The notes under the pieces are model-generated. The model ran no database searches and was not told where the DNA came from. It saw only the letters and a program-made list of their open reading frames with translations. DNA of 63,766 nt, the filler included, from Octopus bimaculoides (taxonomy: Eukaryota), in assembly GCF_001194135.2 (NCBI RefSeq). It is 4 parts of 3 records of this genome, joined end to end, with 100 filler letters (N's around TTAATTAATTAA, not from the genome) between each part and the next. Parts side by side here need not be neighbours in the genome. Positions count along the whole stretch, not along the records: positions 10,476 to 41,139 come from NC_069002.1; 3 more parts are not named here. The stretch is one strand, 5' to 3'. Positions 10,432 through 39,933 of this stretch are shown here, one piece after another. The translations under genes and the position numbers were made by a program. Position 1 is the stretch's first letter; every line of letters begins with the position of its first letter.

Positions 10432-10571
10432 NNNNNNNNNNNNNNNNNNNNNNNNNNNNNNNNNNNNNNNNNNNNTTAAGTTTAGGCACCAGAAATAAGT
10501 ATGGTATTATCCATATAGTTTCAAAATAAGGGGATTAAAATCAAAATAAGCAACAAGGATATCCAAAGTTA

Positions 10572-10661
10572 ATGCAGTACGATCGTTTCCTGGGACTCCA
10601 TTTAATTAAGCAATGGGAACATTACATCAAATGTAAAATGCAGAGCAATCCTCAGCTGCAC
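10572..10661 (-). ncRNA. Type I hammerhead ribozyme with long stem II domain (copy A)
   Basis: Minus: GTGCAG CTGAGGA [59 nt] GAAA CGATCG TA CTGCAT; 6-bp stem I, exact CUGANGA and GAAA core, palindromic ACGATCGT stem III, GUA triplet. Confidence 0.8.
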
Positions 10662-10897
10662 AAAGATATAGAAATTTACTGAAATTTCATTTCAACAGAA
10701 AGACATATTGTTGTAACTGCATTCAAACTCTCCAAGTAGAAAGGAAGAATACAAAAAACCATTTTGACTTAGCCAGACCTTACAGACTAGCCTGTATATG
10801 CCCCATTATTAGAATGTGTGTGTGTGTGTATGAGTCTGCATATCTCCAAGTTGGGTGAACAGAATGTAAGGAAGTAACAAGGATGTCCAGGTATTAA

Positions 10898-10984
10898 TAC
10901 ATTACAGCCGTTTCAAGTGGCTCCATTTAATCGATCAATGTAAACATTCCATCAATTTGAAAGAAACCACTCTCCTCAGACGTA
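10898..10984 (-). ncRNA. Type I hammerhead ribozyme with long stem II domain (copy B)
   Basis: Minus: TACGT CTGAGGA GAGTGGTTTC...GGAGCCACTT GAAA CGGCTG TA ATGTA; the 10-bp basal stem II pairs fully when G-U is allowed. Confidence 0.8.
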
Positions 10985-11232
10985 GATGACCATATAGATT
11001 TCTAACCTAAAGGATAAACCATTTTAGCAAATTCATATCAATACCAGAAACCAAAATAATTTCCTCTGCTACTCTCTAAATTATGGTAGGCTTAATAAGA
11101 TATGAATTTTTTCTAATCTCATTCTTTTACAAATATAACATAAGGAAATAAAGTACTTATTTTGGTTTCTGGTATTGATATAAATTTGTTTAAAATGGTT
11201 TATCCTTTATATTGAAAATCCATATGGTCATC

Positions 11233-11319
11233 TATGTCTGAGGAGAGAGGTTTCTTTCAAATTGATGTATTGTTTCCATTGATTGATTAAATGGAGCTGC
11301 TCGAAACGGCCGTAATATA
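11233..11319 (+). ncRNA. Type I hammerhead ribozyme with long stem II domain (copy C)
   Basis: TATGT CTGAGGA GAGAGGTTTC...GGAGCTGCTC GAAA CGGCCG TA ATATA; G10.1-C11.1 intact, palindromic ACGGCCGT stem III, GUA triplet. Confidence 0.82.
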
Positions 11320-11412
11320 TTAATACCTGGACATACTTGTTACTTATTCATACATTAAAGCATGTTGTTTGTACGCAAGCAGGACATTTGAGTGAATAAA
11401 AATTTAGTTAAA

Positions 11413-11504
11413 CTTATAGCCATGAGTTCCTCCATTAATCACCAAACAAATCAGCTAATAAGTTAATTAATTGATTAATTAATCATTTGTAGGTCGTCAG
11501 TAAG
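11413..11504 (-). ncRNA. Degenerate long-stem-II hammerhead (copy D)
   Basis: Minus: CTTA CTGACGA [64 nt ending ATTAATGGAG] GA-ACTCATGGCT A TAAG; stem I CTTA/TAAG; one core A missing. Confidence 0.55.
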
Positions 11505-11639
11505 GTCGCTGAGACTACAATGCGTACTGAAAAGACCAAGTAAACACATACATATTCATTTTCAACTAAATTTTTATTCACTCAAATGTCTTGCTTGAAT
11601 ACAAACAACATGTTTTAATGCCTGTGTGTATATATATGT

Positions 11640-11870
11640 TCATTTCCTTATTGCCCACAGGGGGCTAAACATTGAGGCGACAAACAAAGACAGACAAAGG
11701 GAGTAAGTCAATTACATTGACCCCAGTGCATAACTGGTGCTTATCTAATTGACCCCGAAAGGATGAAAGGCAAAGTTGACCTCAGCAGAATTTGAACTCA
11801 GAACGTAACGACAGACGAAATACCAATAAGCATTTCGCCCGGCGTGCTAACGATTCTGCCAGCTCACCAC
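11640..11870 (-). mobile_element. tRNA-derived SINE (GGTCGACTTTGCCTTTCATCC family)
   Basis: Reverse complement of the copy at 26412-26645. Confidence 0.85.
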
Positions 11871-12919
11871 CCCATCCATTACATACATATATATAAGTGT
11901 GTGTGTATGTATGTATGTATGCATAAATGTATGCATATATATGTATGCATAAATATATATATATATATATGCATGTGTGTTTTTGTGTCTTCTTGTTTTG
12001 ACATTGTGTGATTGTTGTAAATGAGTGTCACTGTTATACAAGCAGTGTCCTTTGTTTCCAGTCTTCTGTGAAAACATGTCTGGCCACAGAGAAATGTAAT
12101 GTTGTTTTGGAAACAGATTAGGCTTGGTGACAGGAAGGGCATTCAGCCTTAGAAATACAGCCCCCAACAAACTCTGTCTGGCCCATGTAGACATGGGAAA
12201 CAGGGTGATAAAATGATGATGATGATGGTGGTGGTGATCTTTTTGTGGATAAAAAAAAATGTGATTTGTCAGACTGGTCCCAATCTTTACATTGGGACCT
12301 CGTTACAGATCAACTACCTTCATTAACTATTTTCATAGAAATATTATTTATAAGGTCATTGCCATATTTCATCTGAGCTCGTATGTTCCAAGTTCAAACC
12401 TTACCTGGATCAACTTTGTCTTTGATCCTGCCAGGATCAATAAAATAAATCATCAATCAGCTATCAGCATCAATGATATCGGTTAACTTTTCTCCTTTGT
12501 GAGATTTGTGGCTAAATCAGACACATTTATAAACGAGTACTTCAGAGAACTGAATAATCGGATTTGCATAAGCCTATGCATTCTGAGCATTCATTTGGCT
12601 TAATATATTACTTGTATACTAAAAGTGTGTTCTCACAATAGAGTAAATGCAATAGATTTTTGTTTGGTCAATACTGTGTGCAGACAGATAAGGGCAGCTT
12701 GTCTTTTATCCATAAATATATGTCTGTCACTTAAGCCCACACCTAACATTAATAACAATAAGGCAATGGACGCATGCAAAGAGGAAAGGAAGAGAGAATG
12801 GAGATAAAGTGAGGGGTTGTTGGTGATAGCATAAGGTCTGGGAGCCGGGGAATGGGGTGGGNNNNNNNNNNNNNNNNNNNCCACTAGGTAATCAAACTTA
12901 TTGACATTCTGTAGACTCT

Positions 12920-13230
12920 CCTTTGTGTGGAAGACAGTCTTGAAGGATGAGAGGGAGAGGGAGAGAAAGGGGATAGAGAGAGGAGAGAGAAAGGTAGAGG
13001 GGGAAGAGAAAGGAGATGGGAGAGAGAGGAAGGAAAAGAAAAGAAAGGGAGAAAGAGGGAGAGAGGAGAAATGAAGGGGAGAGAGGGAAAGACAGAAGAG
13101 AGGGAGAGAGGGGAAAGAAAGAATAGAAGAGGAGAGAGGGAGACAGGGAGGGAGAGGGGGAGAGATGGAAAGAGAGGGCGGGAGAGAGGAGGATGTGAGA
13201 GAAATGATAAAAGAGAATGAGAAGAAAACA
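12920..13230. repeat. Purine-rich (GA/GGA) low-complexity tract
   Basis: Direct reading. Confidence 0.9.
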
Positions 13231-16194: not shown

Positions 16195-16375
16195 AAGTGG
16201 TGGTGGTGGGGGTGCATGTTGATTCCTTTGGATCCCAGGGCTCAACTGCTGCTTATAAAAAATAACCCTGAAAGAATGAAAGACAAAGTGGACTTCGGTG
16301 AAATTTGAACTCAGAACCTAAAGACAGATATGCATTTTGCTTGGCATGCTGACAATTCTGCCAGTGTGCTGTCTT
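16195..16375 (-). mobile_element. Diverged tRNA-derived SINE (26412 family)
   Basis: GAATGAAAGACAAAGTGGACTTCGG...TTTGAACTCAGA matches the family in reverse. Confidence 0.7.
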
Positions 16376-19614: not shown

Positions 19615-19666
19615 NNNNNNNNNNNNNNNNNNNNNNNNNNNNNNNNNNNNNNNNNNNNNNNNNNNN

Positions 19667-20700: not shown

Positions 20701-21414
20701 AAAACAAAAAAAAAAAAAANNNNNNNNNNNNNNNNNNNNNNNNNNNNNNNNNNNNNNNNNNNNNNNNNNNNNNNNNNNNNNNNNNNNNNNNNNNNNNNNN
20801 NNNNNNNNNNNNNNNNNNNNNNNNNNNNNNNNNNNNNNNNNNNNNNNNNNNNNNNNNNNNNNNNNNNNNNNNNNNNNNNNNNNNNNNNNNNNNNNNNNNN
20901 NNNNNNNNNNNNNNNNNNNNNNNNNNNNNNNNNNNNNNNNNNNNNNNNNNNNNNNNNNNNNNNNNNNNNNNNNNNNNNNNNNNNNNNNNNNNNNNNNNNN
21001 NNNNNNNNNNNNNNNNNNNNNNNNNNNNNNNNNNNNNNNNNNNNNNNNNNNNNNNNNNNNNNNNNNNNNNNNNNNNNNNNNNNNNNNNNNNNNNNNNNNN
21101 NNNNNNNNNNNNNNNNNNNNNNNNNNNNNNNNNNNNNNNNNNNNNNNNNNNNNNNNNNNNNNNNNNNNNNNNNNNNNNNNNNNNNNNNNNNNNNNNNNNN
21201 NNNNNNNNNNNNNNNNNNNNNNNNNNNNNNNNNNNNNNNNNNNNNNNNNNNNNNNNNNNNNNNNNNNNNNNNNNNNNNNNNNNNNNNNNNNNNNNNNNNN
21301 NNNNNNNNNNNNNNNNNNNNNNNNNNNNNNNNNNNNNNNNNNNNNNNNNNNNNNNNNNNNNNNNNNNNNNNNNNNNNNNNNNNNNNNNNNNNNNNNNNNN
21401 NNNNNNNNNNNNNN

Positions 21415-21849: not shown

Positions 21850-22055
21850 TATTCTAGGCACAAGGCCCGAAATTTTTGGTGAGGGGGCCAGTTGATTAGA
21901 CTGACACCAGTGTGCAACTGGTACTTAATTTATCGACCCTGAAAGGATGAAAGGCAAAGTCGACCTCGGCGGAATTTGAACTCAGAACATAAAGACAGAC
22001 GAAATACCACTAAGCATTTTGCTTGGCATGCTAACATTTCTGCCAGTTTGCCACC
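21850..22055 (-). mobile_element. tRNA-derived SINE (26412 family)
   Basis: GGATGAAAGGCAAAGTCGACCTCGGCGGAATTTGAACTCAG. Confidence 0.85.
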
Positions 22056-25237: not shown

Positions 25238-25882
25238 TNNNNNNNNNNNNNNNNNNNNNNNNNNNNNNNNNNNNNNNNNNNNNNNNNNNNNNNNNNNNNN
25301 NNNNNNNNNNNNNNNNNNNNNNNNNNNNNNNNNNNNNNNNNNNNNNNNNNNNNNNNNNNNNNNNNNNNNNNNNNNNNNNNNNNNNNNNNNNNNNNNNNNN
25401 NNNNNNNNNNNNNNNNNNNNNNNNNNNNNNNNNNNNNNNNNNNNNNNNNNNNNNNNNNNNNNNNNNNNNNNNNNNNNNNNNNNNNNNNNNNNNNNNNNNN
25501 NNNNNNNNNNNNNNNNNNNNNNNNNNNNNNNNNNNNNNNNNNNNNNNNNNNNNNNNNNNNNNNNNNNNNNNNNNNNNNNNNNNNNNNNNNNNNNNNNNNN
25601 NNNNNNNNNNNNNNNNNNNNNNNNNNNNNNNNNNNNNNNNNNNNNNNNNNNNNNNNNNNNNNNNNNNNNNNNNNNNNNNNNNNNNNNNNNNNNNNNNNNN
25701 NNNNNNNNNNNNNNNNNNNNNNNNNNNNNNNNNNNNNNNNNNNNNNNNNNNNNNNNNNNNNNNNNNNNNNNNNNNNNNNNNNNNNNNNNNNNNNNNNNNN
25801 NNNNNNNNNNNNNNNNNNNNNNNNNNNNNNNNNNNNNNNNNNNNNNNNNNNNNNNNNNNNNNNNNNNNNNNNNNNNNNNNNN

Positions 25883-26411: not shown

Positions 26412-26645
26412 AGGCGGCGAGCTGGCAGAAACGTTAGCACGCCGGACGAAATGCTTAGCGGTATTTTGTCTGCTGCTACGTTCTGAGTTCAAATTCCGCC
26501 AAGGTCGACTTTGCCTTTCATCCTTCCGGGGTCGATTAAATAAGTACCAGTTACGCACTGGGGTCGATATAATTGACTTAATTTGTTTGTGTCTTTGTTT
26601 GTCCCCTCTGTGTGTAGCCCCTTGTGGGCAGTGAAGAAATAAATA
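26412..26645 (+). mobile_element. tRNA-derived SINE, well-preserved copy
   Basis: GGCGGCGAGCTGGCAGAAACG head, GAGTTCAAATTCC B-box, central GGTCGACTTTGCCTTTCATCCTT domain; further copies at 33560(-), 51085(+), 55205(-) and 59445(-). Confidence 0.88.
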
Positions 26646-29108: not shown

Positions 29109-29593
29109 NNNNNNNNNNNNNNNNNNNNNNNNNNNNNNNNNNNNNNNNNNNNNNNNNNNNNNNNNNNNNNNNNNNNNNNNNNNNNNNNNNNNNNNNNNNN
29201 NNNNNAAAAAAAAAAAAAAAAAGGAAGTCCTGGTGTTGATATCTTTGACTAAGACTCTTCAAGGTGGTGCTCCAGCTTGGCCACAGTCTAATTCCAAACA
29301 AGTTAAAGAATAAAAGAATGCATACATACATTTACATTGATATATATCATATTTCCATAAGGATTTAGGCATGTTCCGGAATATTCTTTTAACAGATGTT
29401 TACAGCAAATTTATGAAGCTACCGCTCCCCACCTGGCTGGTAACTGACAGTACCAACCTTCCCATCTCCTGCCGCCAACCATTGACTGAGGAAATAAGCA
29501 GGAATGTAATGTAATTCTTTTACAAAAAACAGCAACAGAGAAACCAAAGACGTATATAAAACATGTTAAGCAATTTCCATGTCATTTAAGTAA

Positions 29594-30310: not shown

Positions 30311-30843
30311 GATGATGATGATGATGGTGATGGTGATGGTGATGGTGATGGTGATGATGCTGTTGACGATGATGATTATAATGATAATGATGATGATATA
30401 TGCATGTTTTTGCTTATATATAATATATANNNNNNNNNNNNNNNNNNNNNNNNNNNNNNNNNNNNNNNNNNNNNNNNNNNNNNNNNNNNNNNNNNNNNNN
30501 NNNNNNNNNNNNNNNNNNNNNNNNNNNNNNNNNNNNNNNNNNNNNNNNNNNNNNNNNNNNNNNNNNNNNNNNNNNNNNNNNNNNNNNNNNNNNNNNNNNN
30601 NNNNNNNNNNNNNNNNNNNNNNNNNNNNNNNNNNNNNNNNNNNNNNNNNNNNNNNNNNNNNNNNNNNNNNNNNNNNNNNNNNNNNNNNNNNNNNNNNNNN
30701 NNNNNNNNNNNNNNNNNNNNNNNNNNNNNNNNNNNNNNNNNNNNNNNNNNNNNNNNNNNNNNNNNNNNNNNNNNNNNNNNNNNNNNNNNNNNNNNNNNNN
30801 NNNNNNNNNNNNNNNNNNNNNNNNNNNNNNNNNNNNNNNNNNN

Positions 30844-31254: not shown

Positions 31255-31352
31255 NNNNNNNNNNNNNNNNNNNNNNNNNNNNNNNNNNNNNNNNNNNNNN
31301 NNNNNNNNNNNNNNNNNNNNNNNNNNNNNNNNNNNNNNNNNNNNNNNNNNNN

Positions 31353-32191: not shown

Positions 32192-32657
32192 NNNNNNNNN
32201 NNNNNNNNNNNNNNNNNNNNNNNNNNNNNNNNNNNNNNNNNNNNNNNNNNNNNNNNNNNNNNNNNNNNNNNNNNNNNNNNNNNNNNNNNNNNNNNNNNNN
32301 NNNNNNNNNNNNNNNNNNNNNNNNNNNNNNNNNNNNNNNNNNNNNNNNNNNNNNNNNNNNNNNNNNNNNNNNNNNNNNNNNNNNNNNNNNNNNNNNNNNN
32401 NNNNNNNNTATAAACTTGCTGTTAACAAAAGTCAGGATGCATGGCATTCAGTTATTCCCTAAATGAAAAATGCATTAAATACTTCGAAACGTACACCAGA
32501 ACCCTAATACCTTATCAAGTGATAAGTACTTAAATGAAGAGTACTCTTTCGTTCATTATTATTATAAGTTAAAGGCTCCTGGTTTCAGTACTCTGAGTCT
32601 CCGATTTCCAACCGTTCAACTGCTTATCTGAGTTTGTTCGTTCCTTTGAAATATCCA

Positions 32658-32990: not shown

Positions 32991-33829
32991 TCAATATATT
33001 TTCGAAATAGTATTTGAAAGTTATGATGAAAACAATTACCATTATGATATTTACAAAAAATTCTTGAAAACAACATGTTTGAAAACAACTCTTTCAAACT
33101 CACATTTTTTGTTTTACTTCTGAATCTCATAGGAATCTGTAAAATGTCTTAAACTTTATACAAGCAAGGAAACTTCAATAAATTTCCTTATGAAATTTCC
33201 TTGTTTAAGTAATATTTTAATGTAATATTTTTAGAAATAATGGTTATCTCCACATGTGTATGTATATGCATATGCATGTGGGTGTGTGAGTGTGTGCGTT
33301 TATATTCCATGCTTGTCACCATTTGAATGAATCGGTTCTGTTGTTGACATGTCTTGTTGACATTATGACCAGTTGCTTGGTGCTTTCAATCACCTGTGGA
33401 ATAAAGGAATCTTTTACTTGGAAACCAAACAAAAGTTGGCAACTGGAAGAGCATCCAGATGTAAAAATCCACCCCAAATAACTCTCTGCCAAAACCCATG
33501 GCAGCAACGATAAAAACAGACGCTAAATGAGAAAATAAAAAAAAACAATGTTTTATTATTGGTTTTAAATTTTGGCCCAAGGTGGCCAGCAGTTTCACGG
33601 CAAGGAGTAAGTTGATTAAATCAAGCACAATGTTCAACTGGTACTAATTTCATCAGCTCCAAAAAGGATGAAAGACAAGGTCAACCCCCAGTGGTATTTG
33701 AGCTAAGGATGCAAAGAGGGACGAAATGCCACAAAGCATTTCACCCAGCATGCTAATGATTCTGCCAGTTTACTGCCTTACAAAATGTTCTATTACTAGG
33801 TTGAGGAAAAAGTTTGGGCTCTATGTTAA

Positions 33830-34848: not shown

Positions 34849-36056
34849 TTCATCATCATCGTCATTTAATGTTCGTTTTCCATGCTAGCATGGGTTGCAC
34901 AGTTTGACTGAGGACTAACAAGCCAGGAGGTTGCACCAGGCTCCTGTCTGATCAGGCAGTGTTTCTACAGCTGGATTCCCTTCCTAATGCCAACCACTCC
35001 ATGAGTGTAGTGAGTGCTTTTACGTGCTGCACATGAAAGCTGTCTTCTTGGTTAATCTTCCTTTGATGTTGCTGTACCTCTTATGTGTCCTGGGTACATC
35101 ATATGGAGTTTCTACCTACACCTTTTCTACAGATCGAGCAGGGCCATCTACCTGAAGGGGGTTTGTGTTTTCTCTACCTTCCTACTTATTAGAACTTTGG
35201 TCTTTGCTACATTGAGTCTAAGGCCCTTCAATTCTAGACCTTGCTTCCACATCTGAAATTTCTTGTCTAGTTCTGGTAGTGATTCAGCTATGAGAGCAAG
35301 GTCATTAGCATAGAGGAGCTCCCAGGAGCAACCCGTCTTGAATTCCTCTGTTATTGCCTGGAGGACTATGATGAATAAAAGGGGACAGAGGGATGAACCT
35401 GGATGGACCCCAACTTCTACCTGGAATTCTTCACTATATTTATTGCCAATCCTAACCTTACTAACGGCCTCTCTGTATAGGGCCTGTACAGCCCTAGTTA
35501 ACCATTTGTCAATCCCCAGTTTCCATATCGCCCACCAGATAAAGGATCGGGAGACCCTGTCAAAGGCTTTCTCCAAGTCCACAAAAGCTAAGTATAGGAG
35601 TTTATCTTTGGCTAGGTATTTCTCCTGCAGTTGCCGTACCAGGAATGCAGCATCAGTGGTGCTTCTACCTGGCACAAAACCGAACTGCATCTCATCTAAG
35701 CAGACTCTCTCCCTAATGAGATGGGCTATGACCCTCTCCATGACCTTCATCACCTGATCCAGCAGTTTGATACCCCTGTAATTATTTCTATCTAAAGCAT
35801 CACCATTACCCTTGTAGCAGTTGACTATGGTGCTGCTACGCCAGTCATTGGGTATGACTTCATCATGAACTACCAAGTTTACAATGTGGGTGACTAGGTC
35901 ATAACCCACACCACCAGATGTTTTAAGCATCTCAGCAGTGATTCCTGATGGTCTGGGGGCTTTCCCTGGCTTCATACCCTTAATTGCTTTATCTACCATG
36001 GAGCTGTCTATTCGGAGAGCTGGCCCCTCTACTGGGTCAACATTCGGTAGGTTCTC
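34800..36056 (-). mobile_element. RTE-clade LINE: reverse transcriptase remnant joined to 3' end and (ATG)n tail
   Basis: ORF 35148..36056: KPGKAP, NYRGIKLL, QFGFVPGRST, FVDLEKAFDRV, GVHPGSSLCPLLF, LLYANDL (YADD mutated), LNVAKTK; degenerate PHD at 35030-35150. Confidence 0.93.
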
Positions 36057-36132
36057 ATATATATGTTTATACATATATGTATATACATATATGTATATAC
36101 ATATATACATACATACATACATACATCTATAC

Positions 36133-36178
<46 letters not shown>

Positions 36179-36183
36179 ACACA

Positions 36184-37400
36184 TACAGGGTGCTGTGAAT
36201 AAACTGTTGTCTAAATTACACAAAAACGAAAATAACACTGACATCTCATTTTAACAAATATATTTATCTAAATTACCTAAAAATATCTTGAAATACTAAA
36301 GAATAGATTTATTCAATAAAATCGCCATTGGCTTCAACCACAGCCTCCTGACGACTTCAGAATCTCCTGCAACTCTTCTGGACGGTCTCTTTGTTTAAAT
36401 TGGTGAATGCTGCCATAATTATTACCTTCAGTTCATCTTTGGTGTTACGAGGAGATTTGTTGGTCTCTCGCTCAACTCTGCCCCACACATAATAATCAAG
36501 GGGGTTACAGTTTGGGGAGTTAGGTGGCCAGATGTTAGGGGTGATGTGGTCGCAGAAATTGTCTGACAGCCATTACTGGATTCTCCTGCTTGTGTTGCAT
36601 GATGCAGAGTCCTGTTGCCAGACATAGGGTCTTCCAGTAACCGCTCACTTGACCCAAGGCAGTACTACCTCCTCCAGGCCCCCATCTTGAGTGTGAAGCT
36701 GTGTGGGAAGATAAATGGAGTCATAACATCGCCATCACTAGTAATCACTCCAAACACCATAATGTTGACTGGATGTTTGATTTTTATCACTCCTGGTACA
36801 TGTTTTGGGGATACTGTAAACCAACAGTTGTTCTGTATGTTCACCACCTGAGCCTGGCAAAAATATTTCTTGTCTGAGAAAAAAAACCAAAGCATGTTTG
36901 GTTGGAGGAGATGCCTGAGTTTGTTCAAAAGCTTCGTAGTGCTGTCTTTCCTCTTGTCCTTGATGGTTTGGGGTAAAAATTGACCCTTTCTCATCTTGTA
37001 TAAGGAACACCAAATGTCTTCATGCACAACCTGCCTGATAAGAAACTCAGACACTGCCATGTCCCTGGCAATGGACCTGATTGACTTGGAGGGATCGTTG
37101 TCAATCGTGGCCTGGATCTCACCAACAAATTCAGGAGTTCTTTTCTTATCAGAACAATCAGAGTGAGTTTTCCGAGCTGCCCTACTTTCGTAATCACCAT
37201 TAGACTTCCAAATCCTCTGCACTGTCCTCATATTGACACTCAAACACTCTGAAATGTTTGTATTGGATCTTCTGGCATGAATGCCAAGCAGTACAGCATG
37301 TCTTTTCAAAATTTCTGGCAGGGTGAATTGCGACATGGTGCTGTATTTCTTACATATGGTGCCCAACTGACCCTACTATACTGTGTAGTTGACAAAATTT
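36184..37400 (-). mobile_element. DD37D (maT) Tc1/mariner-superfamily transposon, non-functional
   Basis: TA|CAGGGTG terminus; HTH-like N-terminus in ORF 36665..37366; catalytic SDKKYF, WQQD, then 37 residues (one a stop) before D in WPPNSPNCNPLDYYVW. Confidence 0.88.
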
Positions 37401-37600: not shown

Positions 37601-38124
37601 CAGCTATAGAATATAAGGAATATAAAAGACTATAAGAAAATCTGAACTCTGATTCTACTAGATTTAAGTGATTAAGCAAAACTTGATGGTTTCAAGTTCT
37701 GACCGAGATCCATTTTTACTTGAAGGGTGTCAAGAGGAATAATCAGACTGGAAATTGAAACCAAGTTTCTACTTAAAGAAATCTTATGACTAATGTTTAC
37801 ATTCATAACAAGGTTAATATCGCATGCTGTGAGGTATTACGTGGCTTTAAACTTGGTGGCTTCCTGCCAAAGACTGCATGTGATAGACTGTGCATAAGGT
37901 GCAGACATACATACCTACATACATACATACACTCACACACATACATACACACACATACATACGTACATACATACGTACGTACATACATACATAAACATAC
38001 ATACGTATGCACATACATACCTGCATACATGTATACATACATACATATATATAATGTGTGTATGTGTATGTATATGTATATATATATGTGTATATATATA
38101 AGCAATGTTAATTCTCTAAATGAA

Positions 38125-38167
<43 letters not shown>

Positions 38168-38627
38168 TATATATTGGGTCANNNNNNNNNNNNNNNNNNN
38201 NNNNNNNNNNNNNNNNNNNNNNNNNNNNNNNNNNNNNNNNNNNNNNNNNNNNNNNNNNNNNNNNNNNNNNNNNNNNNNNNNNNNNNNNNNNNNNNNNNNN
38301 NNNNNNNNNNNNNNNNNNNNNNNNNNNNNNNNNNNNNNNNNNNNNNNNNNNNNNNNNNNNNNNNNNNNNNNNNNNNNNNNNNNNNNNNNNNNNNNNNNNN
38401 NNNNNNNNNNNNNNNNNNNNNNNNNNNNNNNNNNNNNNNNNNATGCAGTTTTTTTATACTTCTTTTATTTTTCAAAATTAAGATAAATAAAGTTCTTTTT
38501 TAGTCTAAAATATACTCTCCTTCATTTTCTACAAGGCCCTTCCATCAATCTGGTAGACTTGCAAGGCCCTTCTTCCAAAAGTCACTTGTCAGTGATAAAA
38601 AAATACTCCTCCAGTACTGCTTTAACC

Positions 38628-39195: not shown

Positions 39196-39933
39196 TGTTC
39201 CACCTTCACATGAGAGCATGTATCCCTGCCTCGTAAAATTCTGTTGACTGTTCTTTGAGCCACTTCTTCACTACAGTTTTCACTTCCTCGTCACTGGAAT
39301 AATGTTTGCCTCTCAAACCCTCTTTCATGGGGCCGAAGAGATGATAGTCTGAAGGCGCTAAATTATTCCAGTGACGAGGAAGTTAAAACTGTAGTGAAGA
39401 AGTGGCTCAAAGAACAGTCAACAGAATTTTACAGGGCAGGGATAAATGCTCTCATTCGAAGGTGGAACATTGCTATTGAAAGAAACGGTGACTATATTGA
39501 GAAGTAGGGATGTGATCCACAGAGGACCAGCTTCATTTTGATGTATGATACATGTTCCTGTGTTGGTAATTATACCTGTCCTAAACAAAATGGNNNNNNN
39601 NNNCGTCACTGGAATAATGTTTGCCTCTCAAACCCTCTTTCATGGGGCCGAAGAGATGATAGTCTGAAGGCGCTAAATTATTCCAGTGACGAGGAAGTTA
39701 AAACTGTAGTGAAGAAGTGGCTCAAAGAACAGTCAACAGAATTTTACAGGGCAGGGATAAATGCTCTCATTCGAAGGTGGAACATTGCTATTGAAAGAAA
39801 CGGTGACTATATTGAGAAGTAGGGATGTGATCCACAGAGGACCAGCTTCATTTTGATGTATGATACATGTTCCTGTGTTGGTAATTATACCTGTCCTAAA
39901 CAAAATGGCATTACTTTTTGACTCACCCTTGTA
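39196..39933 (+). mobile_element. mariner 3' end with foldback inversion and a probable assembly duplication
   Basis: YSSDEEVKTVVKKWL...RWNIAIERNGDYIEK; minus arm LAPSDYHLFGPMKEGLRGKHY; terminus TTACTTTTTGACTCACCCTTG|TA; 39604-39908 repeats 39289-39593 across a 10-N gap. Confidence 0.88.

What the first reader, a model, noticed from the sequence alone, without database searches (positions are those of the whole stretch)
10572..11504. Hotspot of four related long-stem-II hammerhead ribozymes in tandem and inverted array (retrozyme-like system)
Seen: within 930 bp, four motifs share one layout: stem I, CUGA(G/C)GA, a 62-64 nt (59 nt in A) stem II domain, GAAA, palindromic stem III, NUA, stem I'. 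They are A 10572-10661(-), B 10898-10984(-), C 11233-11319(+) and D 11413-11504(-, damaged). Stem I changes sequence but still pairs (GTGCAG/CTGCAT, TACGT/ATGTA, TATGT/ATATA, CTTA/TAAG). Stem III changes but stays palindromic or nearly so (ACGATCGT, ACGGCYGT, ACTCATGGCT). All four keep ATTAA(A)TGGAG on the 3' side of stem II, and A-C share a downstream GGAYATNCTTGTTRCTT. Established: type I hammerheads with short palindromic stem III occur in Penelope-like element repeats and metazoan non-LTR retrozymes, can cleave as dimers, and tandem copies can release monomers that circularise; stem II in those is normally short. Inference: this is a family of self-cleaving repeats with an enlarged stem II module. 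A minus-strand transcript cut at B (10903/10902) and A (10578/10577) would release a 325-nt RNA, a retrozyme-sized circRNA candidate. I cannot verify novelty without a search.
Basis: partly seen in the sequence, partly recalled or inferred. Interest (0 to 1): 0.9.

Follow-up and report, generated by a model that had tools for sequence, protein, structure and literature searches.

The report
Long-helix-II hammerhead ribozyme repeats, three copies
Three of the four reported motifs are real, related hammerhead self-cleaving RNA motifs carried by copies of a small retroelement; they resemble known animal hammerheads except for an unusually long second helix, and the fourth motif is not one of them.

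Summary
A (10572-10661 -), B (10898-10984 -) and C (11233-11319 +) are confirmed as homologous type I hammerhead (HHR) motifs. All three have an intact core (CUGAGGA, GAAA, A15.1-U16.1, A17), a 5-6 bp helix I, and a helix III of 2 bp plus a palindromic tetraloop that pairs over 8 nt in a dimer. Helix II is a 58-59 nt imperfect hairpin. A descriptor search finds exactly these three in the 30-kb piece, against 0.003 expected by chance. Helices I and III keep pairing through double changes. D (11413-11504) is rejected: it lacks GAAA and A15.1, no homology is detectable, and it sits in the loop of an unrelated 268-bp foldback element. Rfam hammerhead models miss all copies.

The arrangement is not a clean retrozyme array. 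B is 5'-truncated and joined head-to-head to C. A (75% identical to B and C) is followed head-to-tail by the start of another unit that runs off the piece edge. B and A are separated by about 80-110 nt of non-homologous sequence containing a microsatellite. The proposed 325-nt RNA shows no unusual structure.

Best reading: decayed copies of a Penelope-like-element (PLE)/retrozyme-type retroelement carrying a hammerhead variant with a greatly extended helix II. No further copies could be retrieved, so family-wide covariation, activity and circRNA formation remain untested.

The parts
10572..10661 (-). HHR copy A. Stem I 10661-10656, CUGAGGA 10655-10649, helix II 10648-10590 (59 nt), GAA 10589-10587, helix III ACGAUCGU 10586-10579, A17 10578, stem I' 10577-10572. 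Predicted cleavage between 10578 and 10577.
   Evidence: CM E=4e-29
10545..10571 (-). Conserved 3' box of unit A (UUAAC-UUUGGAUAUCCUUGUUGCUU). This is the 3' end of the repeat unit.
10476..10544 (-). Start of a further unit ('Z') joined head-to-tail to A and cut by the piece edge. It aligns with 11106-11166 of unit C.
   Evidence: (1/1000 genomic-null segments reach the score)
10662..10791 (-). Probable diverged 5' part of unit A. Homology to the C and B upstream regions is weak and the alignment is ambiguous.
   Evidence: 27/1000 and 84/1000
10792..10871 (.). Non-homologous filler between the 3' end of unit B and unit A. It includes a (TG)n microsatellite at about 10815-10831.
10872..11059 (-). 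Unit B, 5'-truncated. HHR at 10898-10984: stem I 10984-10980, core 10979-10973, helix II 10972-10915, GAA 10914-10912, helix III 10911-10904, A17 10903, stem I' 10902-10898. 3' box at 10872-10897.
   Evidence: z=-3.2; E=1e-36
11106..11348 (+). Unit C, possibly starting near 11068. HHR at 11233-11319: stem I 11233-11237, core 11238-11244, helix II 11245-11302, GAA 11303-11305, helix III 11306-11313, A17 11314, stem I' 11315-11319. 3' box at 11320-11345. Joined head-to-head to B.
   Evidence: (E=6e-36)

Best explanation
The locus holds three visible copies, plus the start of a fourth, of a short AT-rich non-coding retroelement unit. The unit has about 130-165 nt of 5' sequence, an 87-90 nt type I hammerhead, and a conserved 26-32 nt 3' box.

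The hammerhead has a canonical core, a 5-6 bp helix I and the invertebrate-type helix III (A15.1-U16.1 and C-G closing a palindromic tetraloop). That helix III can pair over 8 nt with a second copy to form a double hammerhead. Helix II is replaced by a 58-59 nt imperfect hairpin whose apical and 3' parts are the best-conserved segment of the unit.

Mechanism (inferred). In a transcript of an active copy the motif would cleave 3' of A17. It could act alone, weakly, or as a dimer with a neighbouring or trans copy. This would trim read-through or multimeric retroelement RNA. The long helix II and the 3' box could serve as the handle for the mobilising reverse transcriptase.

The copies are arranged as described for Penelope-like elements and their non-autonomous (retrozyme) derivatives: 5'-truncated, head-to-tail (A then Z) and head-to-head (B against C), next to a microsatellite. 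These particular copies are probably decayed relics. A is 75% identical to B and C, and B is 89% identical to C.

Shown: sequence motif, homology, pairing and compensatory changes, and arrangement. Inferred: cleavage, dimer use, link to PLE machinery, and the role of helix II.
For: - Core and helices were read directly.
- The descriptor finds only A, B and C, with 0.003 hits expected by chance.
- 90% of pair cells are standard pairs, against 28-51% when the 3' partners are slid. Six pairs change on both sides (three in helix I, one in helix III, two at the base of helix II), against 0-1 in slid controls.
- RNAalifold independently recovers helix I and the long helix II.
- Copy B folds into the long helix II with z=-3.2.
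- Homodimers of A and C form the 8-bp intermolecular helix III. A also forms helix I in trans.
- The B/C inverted repeat is 189 nt at 89% identity.
- The A-to-Z head-to-tail junction is supported.
- Published PLE features match: 5' truncation, partial tandems, adjacent inverted 5'-truncated copies, microsatellite bias, and an HHR in the pLTR (PMC8557442).
- Metazoan type I HHRs have a helix III of 1-2 bp with a palindromic loop and act as dimers (PMC4209133).
- Retrozymes are related to PLE pLTRs (preprint 10.64898/2026.07.22.740005).
Against: - No PLE RT/GIY-YIG ORF lies in the 30-kb piece. The only RT is LINE-type.
- No Rfam hammerhead model matches, even at E<=10.
- Only three sequences are available, two of which may descend from a single insertion event, so the covariation evidence is thin.
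- The 10.1-11.1 pair is G-C only in C. It is G-U in B and U-G in A.
- C has an A/G mismatch in helix II, and its MFE does not form the hammerhead.
- No shared 30-40 bp tail and no target-site duplication were recognised.
- No further copies could be retrieved from any collection.
Confidence: 0.6

Rival explanations
1. This is an active non-LTR retrozyme array. Tandem monomers are transcribed, cut by (dimeric) hammerheads at B and A, and release a 325-nt RNA that is circularised and reverse-transcribed.
For: - The HHR is type I with a palindromic helix III.
- GC content is 35-37%.
- The unit size falls within the 170-400 nt range reported for retrozymes (PMC7229834).
- One head-to-tail junction, A to Z, is present.
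- B and A lie on the same strand, 325 nt apart.
Against: - The B-A interval is not a homologous monomer. B's downstream flank is unrelated to the unit start (809/1000 null segments score as high) and contains a microsatellite.
- A is only 75% identical to B.
- The 325-nt RNA (z +0.44) and a putative 243-nt monomer (z +0.4 linear, +0.7 circular) are not unusually structured.
- C lies on the opposite strand.
- Only 3-4 copies are present, and none lies elsewhere in the 30 kb.
Confidence: 0.2
2. This is a foldback or MITE-like DNA element whose long terminal inverted repeats (B and C arms, 10872-11059 and 11157-11345) happen to carry a hammerhead-like sequence. A would then be a solo arm.
For: - The inverted repeat is 189 nt at 89% identity with a 97-nt spacer.
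- A neighbouring 268-bp foldback element (11353-11620) shows that such elements exist here.
Against: - No target-site duplication was seen at 10871/11346 by reading.
- The spacer is homologous to sequence following A in head-to-tail order. That indicates a directional unit, not a symmetric TIR element.
- Compensatory changes preserve RNA helices.
Confidence: 0.1
3. This is a fortuitous hammerhead look-alike in a repeat, never catalytic.
For: - Rfam models do not match.
- The long helix II removes the canonical loop-loop contact.
- The 10.1-11.1 pair is non-canonical in A and B.
- Simple HHR consensus matches do occur by chance in large datasets (PMC3088659).
Against: - The expected chance count is 0.003 per piece.
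- The core is 100% conserved at 75% overall identity.
- Helix I is entirely different in A and in B/C, yet pairs in all three.
- The centre of the helix III palindrome changes from A-U to G-C in a compensatory way.
Confidence: 0.07

Closest known systems
Canonical metazoan type I hammerheads of non-LTR retrozymes and satellite repeats (coral, mussel, Schistosoma, newt/axolotl; PMC7229834, PMC4209133)
   Same: - Type I topology with an identical core.
- Helix I of 5-6 bp.
- Helix III of 2 bp plus a palindromic tetraloop, which can extend into a dimer.
- Carried by short, AT-rich, non-coding repeats with head-to-tail junctions.
   Different: - Helix II is about 58 nt (roughly 20 bp with internal loops) rather than about 4 bp plus loop 2.
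- No recognisable loop 1-loop 2 contact.
- No clean multimeric array.
- The monomer RNA is not unusually self-paired.
Minimal or small-helix-III hammerheads in pseudo-LTRs of Penelope-like elements and Terminons (Cervera & de la Pena 2014, PMC4209133; PMC7761336)
   Same: - Palindromic 15.x-16.x region implying dimer cleavage.
- Short helix I and a larger-than-canonical helix II.
- Dispersed non-coding copies.
- Tandem plus inverted 5'-truncated arrangement near a microsatellite (PMC8557442).
   Different: - PLE helix II is 6-8 bp with a bulged nucleotide before 10.1. Here it is 58-59 nt.
- No PLE ORF lies within the 30 kb.
'HHR_half_core' cases in Naiad PLEs (Craig et al. 2021, PMC8557442 Methods)
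   Same: CUGANGA and GAAA are separated by an unusually long spacer (35-50 nt there) near a PLE 3' end. Standard descriptors miss them.
   Different: Those were reported as not fitting the helix descriptors. Here helices I, II and III are all formed and covary, and the spacer is 58-59 nt.
Rfam Hammerhead_1 (RF00163) and the other Rfam hammerhead families
   Same: Same catalytic core and three-helix junction, by reading.
   Different: No match at the gathering threshold or at E<=10. Rfam-based annotation would therefore not list these copies. For comparison, such annotation listed 235 Hammerhead_1 hits in the giant squid genome (PMC6962438).

Membership tests
Hammerhead ribozyme (class) | Conserved core: C3 U4 G5 A6 N7 G8 A9, G12 A13 A14, A15.1-U16.1, and H17 (not G) | tested here: met
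   A, B and C all have CUGAGGA ... GAA-A...U-A. D fails: GGAAC, with C at 15.1.
Hammerhead ribozyme (class) | Three helices around the core, supported by covariation | tested here: met
   Helices I and III are 100% paired and the structure overall is 90% paired. Six pairs change on both sides, against 0-1 in slid controls. RNAalifold agrees. Only three sequences are available.
Hammerhead ribozyme (class) | G10.1-C11.1 closing pair of helix II | tested here: inconclusive
   C has G-C, B has G-U and A has U-G.
Hammerhead ribozyme (class) | Match to the curated Rfam hammerhead covariance models | tested here: not met
   No hammerhead hit at the gathering threshold over the piece, nor at E<=10 over 10476-12200. 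The about 45-nt excess in helix II plausibly explains this, but a trimmed sequence could not be tested.
Hammerhead ribozyme (class) | Site-specific self-cleavage 3' of position 17 | not testable with these tools
   Needs an in vitro transcription and cleavage assay.
Metazoan non-LTR retrozyme | Head-to-tail tandem repeats of homologous 170-400 bp monomers, each with a type I HHR | tested here: inconclusive
   One head-to-tail junction (A to Z) is supported. B to A is interrupted by about 80-110 nt of unrelated sequence with a microsatellite. C is inverted. The array is cut by the piece edge.
Metazoan non-LTR retrozyme | Low GC content (<45%) and non-coding | tested here: met
   GC is 0.35-0.37. 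No ORF of 90 aa or more lies within 10476-11846.
Metazoan non-LTR retrozyme | Monomer RNA is highly self-paired | tested here: not met
   The 325-nt B-A RNA has z +0.44. The putative 243-nt C monomer has z +0.42 linear and +0.74 circular.
Metazoan non-LTR retrozyme | Accumulation as circRNA | not testable with these tools
   No transcriptome data are available.
Penelope-like element (pLTR hammerhead) | Association with an RT plus GIY-YIG ORF | tested here: inconclusive
   None was found in the 30-kb piece. The only RT is a LINE-type RVT_1 at 35148-36182. The side beyond A is cut off at 10476, and heavily 5'-truncated copies need no ORF.
Penelope-like element (pLTR hammerhead) | Insertion architecture: 5' truncation, partial tandems, and an adjacent inverted 5'-truncated copy | tested here: met
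   B is truncated and lies head-to-head with C. A lies head-to-tail with Z. The pattern is as described in PMC8557442.
Penelope-like element (pLTR hammerhead) | Minimal HHR architecture: helix II of 6-8 bp, a bulged nucleotide before 10.1, helix I of 4-5 bp | tested here: not met
   Helix I fits at 5-6 bp. Helix II is 58-59 nt, and no consistent bulge is seen.

The most novel reading that the evidence does not exclude
These copies represent an undescribed hammerhead subclass, abundant in this (probably cephalopod) genome. The normally 4-8 bp helix II is replaced by a conserved hairpin domain of about 58 nt. Together with the conserved 3' box, this domain would act as the recognition module for a PLE-type reverse transcriptase, coupling self-cleavage to retrotransposition. 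Because Rfam models and standard RNAmotif descriptors miss it, hammerheads and retrozyme circRNAs would be undercounted in such genomes.
Probability: 0.15. Interest if true: 0.6.

Novelty: new variant of a known kind. Interest (0 to 1): 0.4.

Why it matters
Hammerheads in animal retroelements are well known, so the existence of such motifs here is not surprising.

What is unusual is a helix II seven to ten times longer than in described metazoan or PLE hammerheads, combined with canonical helices I and III. Curated covariance models fail to see it.

If the family is large and active, three things would follow:
- Hammerhead architecture would be shown to tolerate, or to exploit, a large helix II domain.
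- Hammerhead and retrozyme censuses based on Rfam or on descriptors with bounded loops would be incomplete.
- The family would offer a system for asking whether the extra domain binds the mobilising reverse transcriptase.

If these are only a few decayed relics, the finding is a minor annotation.

Tried and rejected
- Rfam over the piece at the gathering threshold, and over 10476-12200 at E<=10, gave no hammerhead. The only hits were sub-threshold miRNA-model hits on microsatellites and on the B/C inverted repeat.
- A pattern scan of viral contigs (CTGANGA..TTAAATGGAG..GAAAC) gave 10 loci, L001-L010. All lie inside AT-rich sequences that recur near-identically among the contigs and lack helices I and III. 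I rejected them as chance.
- Two metagenome scans, one genome-contig scan and a second viral scan with family-specific patterns gave 0 hits.
- To fetch more DNA from the source genome I looked up three window ORFs with the look-up of encoding contigs. None was on record.
- A homologue search with the RT ORF gave at best 55-74% identity, with named hits from other invertebrates. P0010 was not on record. L011, fetched from hit P0001, shares only the RT at 65-73% nucleotide identity, so it comes from a different species. No further family copies could be obtained, so no real covariation statistics were possible.
- A CM built from A-C found nothing else in the piece. The weak hits at 37967-38089 and 29208-29347 are a microsatellite and a poly-T/3'-box-like stretch beside an assembly gap.
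- I searched for a PLE ORF in the piece and found none.
- No supplementary sequences are held for PMC8557442.
- Literature searches for hammerheads or retrozymes in cephalopods returned nothing specific, apart from 235 Rfam Hammerhead_1 hits in the giant squid genome.
- I considered D as a decayed member and rejected it.
- The other CTGANGA..GAAAC matches, at 29486 and 33592, lack the helices. The latter lies in a SINE-like repeat.

Full report
**Observation**

Direct reading of 10476-12000 confirms three motifs with one layout.
- A, minus strand 10661 to 10572: GUGCAG-CUGAGGA-[59 nt]-GAA-ACGAUCGU-A-CUGCAU.
- B, minus strand 10984 to 10898: UACGU-CUGAGGA-[58 nt]-GAA-ACGGCUGU-A-AUGUA.
- C, plus strand 11233-11319: UAUGU-CUGAGGA-[58 nt]-GAA-ACGGCCGU-A-AUAUA.

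All three keep every invariant hammerhead core position (C3-A9, G12-A14, A15.1-U16.1) and have A at position 17. The predicted cleavage sites are 10578/10577, 10903/10902 and 3' of 11314. The shared ATTAAATGGAG and the downstream box GGAYATMCUUGUURCUU are also present.

The simple pattern CTGANGA-N40-70-GAAAC occurs 5 times against 0.37 expected. Two of those matches (29486 and 33592) lack the helices.

I wrote a stricter descriptor: helix I of at least 4 bp, core, helix II closure of at least 3 bp, GAAA, a palindromic or hairpin helix III from A15.1 to U16.1, and H17. It finds exactly A, B and C in the 30.6-kb piece on both strands. Across 300 dinucleotide-preserving shuffles the mean was 0.003 hits, and only 1 shuffle had any hit.

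**D is not a member**

- It reads CUGACGA-[54 nt]-AUUAAUGGAG-GAAC-UCAUGGCU-AU-AAG.
- It lacks GAAA and A15.1, and its helix III is not a palindrome.
- blastn with word size 7 finds no similarity to A, B or C.
- A covariance model built from A-C (R1) and run with filters off over the whole piece reports A, B and C at E=1e-29 to 1e-36. It does not report D even at E<=10.
- D lies in the AT-rich loop of a separate foldback element with 60-nt arms at 92% identity (11353-11412 and 11561-11620).

**Structure**

- On the three-sequence alignment A1, the hammerhead structure has 90% of cells as standard pairs. When the 3' partners are slid by 1-3 columns this drops to 28-51%.
- Six pairs change on both sides, against 0-1 in the slid controls.
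- Helix I is completely different in A (GUGCAG/CUGCAU) and in B/C, yet pairs in all three. Between B and C one pair changes from C-G to U-A.
- The centre of the helix III palindrome is A-U in A and G-C in B and C.
- RNAalifold, without being given the structure, recovers helix I and a long helix II.
- Copy B folds into the long helix II (10 + 7 + 4 bp) with z=-3.2. A has z=-1.7. C has an A/G mismatch in helix II and does not form it in its MFE structure.
- As a monomer, helix III can only be 2 bp plus a palindromic tetraloop (GAUC, GGCU or GGCC). This is the architecture described for canonical metazoan type I hammerheads (PMC4209133; PMC7229834).
- Co-folding two copies of A or of C gives the 8-bp intermolecular helix III. 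For A it also gives helix I in trans, which is the double-hammerhead topology.
- Published work says such invertebrate motifs can cleave as monomers, whereas weaker ones need dimers (PMC7761336). Dimer dependence here is therefore open.

**What differs from known hammerheads**

- Helix II is 58-59 nt. It is about 4 bp in canonical metazoan motifs and 6-8 bp in PLE motifs.
- Its apical and 3' part (UUGAUG.A.UGUU..CAUUG.U..AUUAAAUGGAG) is the best-conserved stretch between A and B/C. The basal 5' strand differs but still pairs, in a different register.
- No Rfam hammerhead model matches, at the gathering threshold or at E<=10.
- Craig et al. noted PLE 3' ends with CUGANGA and GAAA 35-50 nt apart that did not fit descriptors ('HHR_half_core'). 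That is the nearest precedent I found.

**Arrangement**

- B and C are the arms of an inverted repeat, 10872-11059 and 11157-11345 (189 nt, 89% identity).
- A resembles B and C over only about 84 nt at 75% identity.
- All three units end 26-32 nt after the hammerhead.
- The flanks beyond the 3' ends of B and C are unrelated to the unit.
- The 72 nt after A's 3' end (10476-10547, minus sense) align with 11106-11166 upstream of C. Only 1 of 1000 random genomic segments reaches that score.
- Two things follow. First, most of the B/C 'spacer' belongs to unit C, and B is a 5'-truncated copy joined head-to-head to it. Second, A is followed head-to-tail by the start of another unit that runs off the piece at 10476.
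- Homology between A's upstream region and those of C and B is weak (27/1000 and 84/1000).
- Between B's 3' end and A lie about 80-110 nt that include a (TG)n microsatellite.

This mix of 5' truncation, partial tandem and an adjacent inverted truncated copy near microsatellites is the insertion signature described for Penelope-like elements, whose pseudo-LTRs carry hammerheads (PMC8557442; PMC11167929). [quoted passage not shown]

**Against a working retrozyme at this locus**

- The B-A interval is not a homologous monomer.
- The 325-nt RNA has z +0.44.
- A putative 243-nt monomer has z +0.4 linear and +0.7 circular. Neither is unusually structured.
- No PLE ORF lies in the piece. The only RT (35148-36182, minus strand) is LINE-type.

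**Limits**

I could not obtain further copies.
- Pattern scans of the viral, metagenome and prokaryotic genome collections gave either chance hits in AT-rich viral contigs or nothing.
- The source genome appears to be absent from the protein and contig collection.
- With three sequences, two of which may stem from one insertion event, the covariation evidence is suggestive and not statistical.
- Activity, dimer use, circularisation and the role of helix II remain untested.

**Verdict**

This is a real hammerhead-bearing repeat family with three confirmed members and a fourth unit cut by the edge. D is rejected. The most likely reading is decayed copies of a PLE/retrozyme-type retroelement carrying a hammerhead variant with a greatly extended helix II.

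It is a new variant of a known kind and of moderate interest. It becomes more interesting only if a genome-wide survey shows a large, covarying, expressed family.

Noticed in passing
11353-11620: A 268-bp foldback element with 60-nt arms at 92% complementarity and a 148-nt AT-rich loop rich in TTAATTAAT.
   Followed up: partly
11640-11885; also 26413-26640, 21882-22055, 16231-16364, 33604-33768: A SINE-like interspersed repeat of about 230 nt, with five copies at 73-85% identity. A sixth fragment may form inverted repeat I4 at 12382-12448. ARAGORN finds no tRNA in it. One copy carries a chance CTGATGA..GAAAC match at 33592-33656.
   Followed up: partly
35148-36182 (-): A 344-aa ORF with an RVT_1 domain (E=9.5e-25), a LINE-type reverse transcriptase fragment. 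The nearest database proteins are only 55-74% identical; the few named hits are annotated as Hydractinia, Mercenaria, Branchiostoma, and a 'Herbaspirillum' MAG protein (74% identity). The source genome therefore seems absent from the collection.
   Followed up: partly
36665-37366 (-): A 233-aa ORF that looks like a transposase N-terminal region by reading. The only Pfam hit is DUF7769, below the curated cut-off.
   Followed up: no
11880-11990: A (TG/TA)n microsatellite that gives sub-threshold Rfam hits to mir-297, mir-466, mir-1277 and others (46 bits at best, against gathering scores of 81-90). These are false positives from simple repeats. The B/C inverted repeat likewise gives weak plant MIR-model hits.
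   Followed up: yes
12862-12880, 19615-19666, 20720-21414, 25239-25882, 29109-29205, 30430-30843, 31255-31352, 32192-32408, 38182-38442, 39594-39603: Ten runs of N (assembly gaps), many of them beside microsatellites. This is a draft assembly, so complex tandem and inverted structures such as the B/C junction should be checked with long reads. There is no gap within 10476-12861.
   Followed up: no
29208-29347 (-): A weak CM hit (E about 0.09), due only to a 3'-box-like AUCAACACCAGGACUUCCUUUUU followed by poly-T and an assembly gap. No hammerhead core is present.
   Followed up: partly
12967-13207: A purine-rich (GA/GGA)n low-complexity tract of about 240 nt.
   Followed up: no
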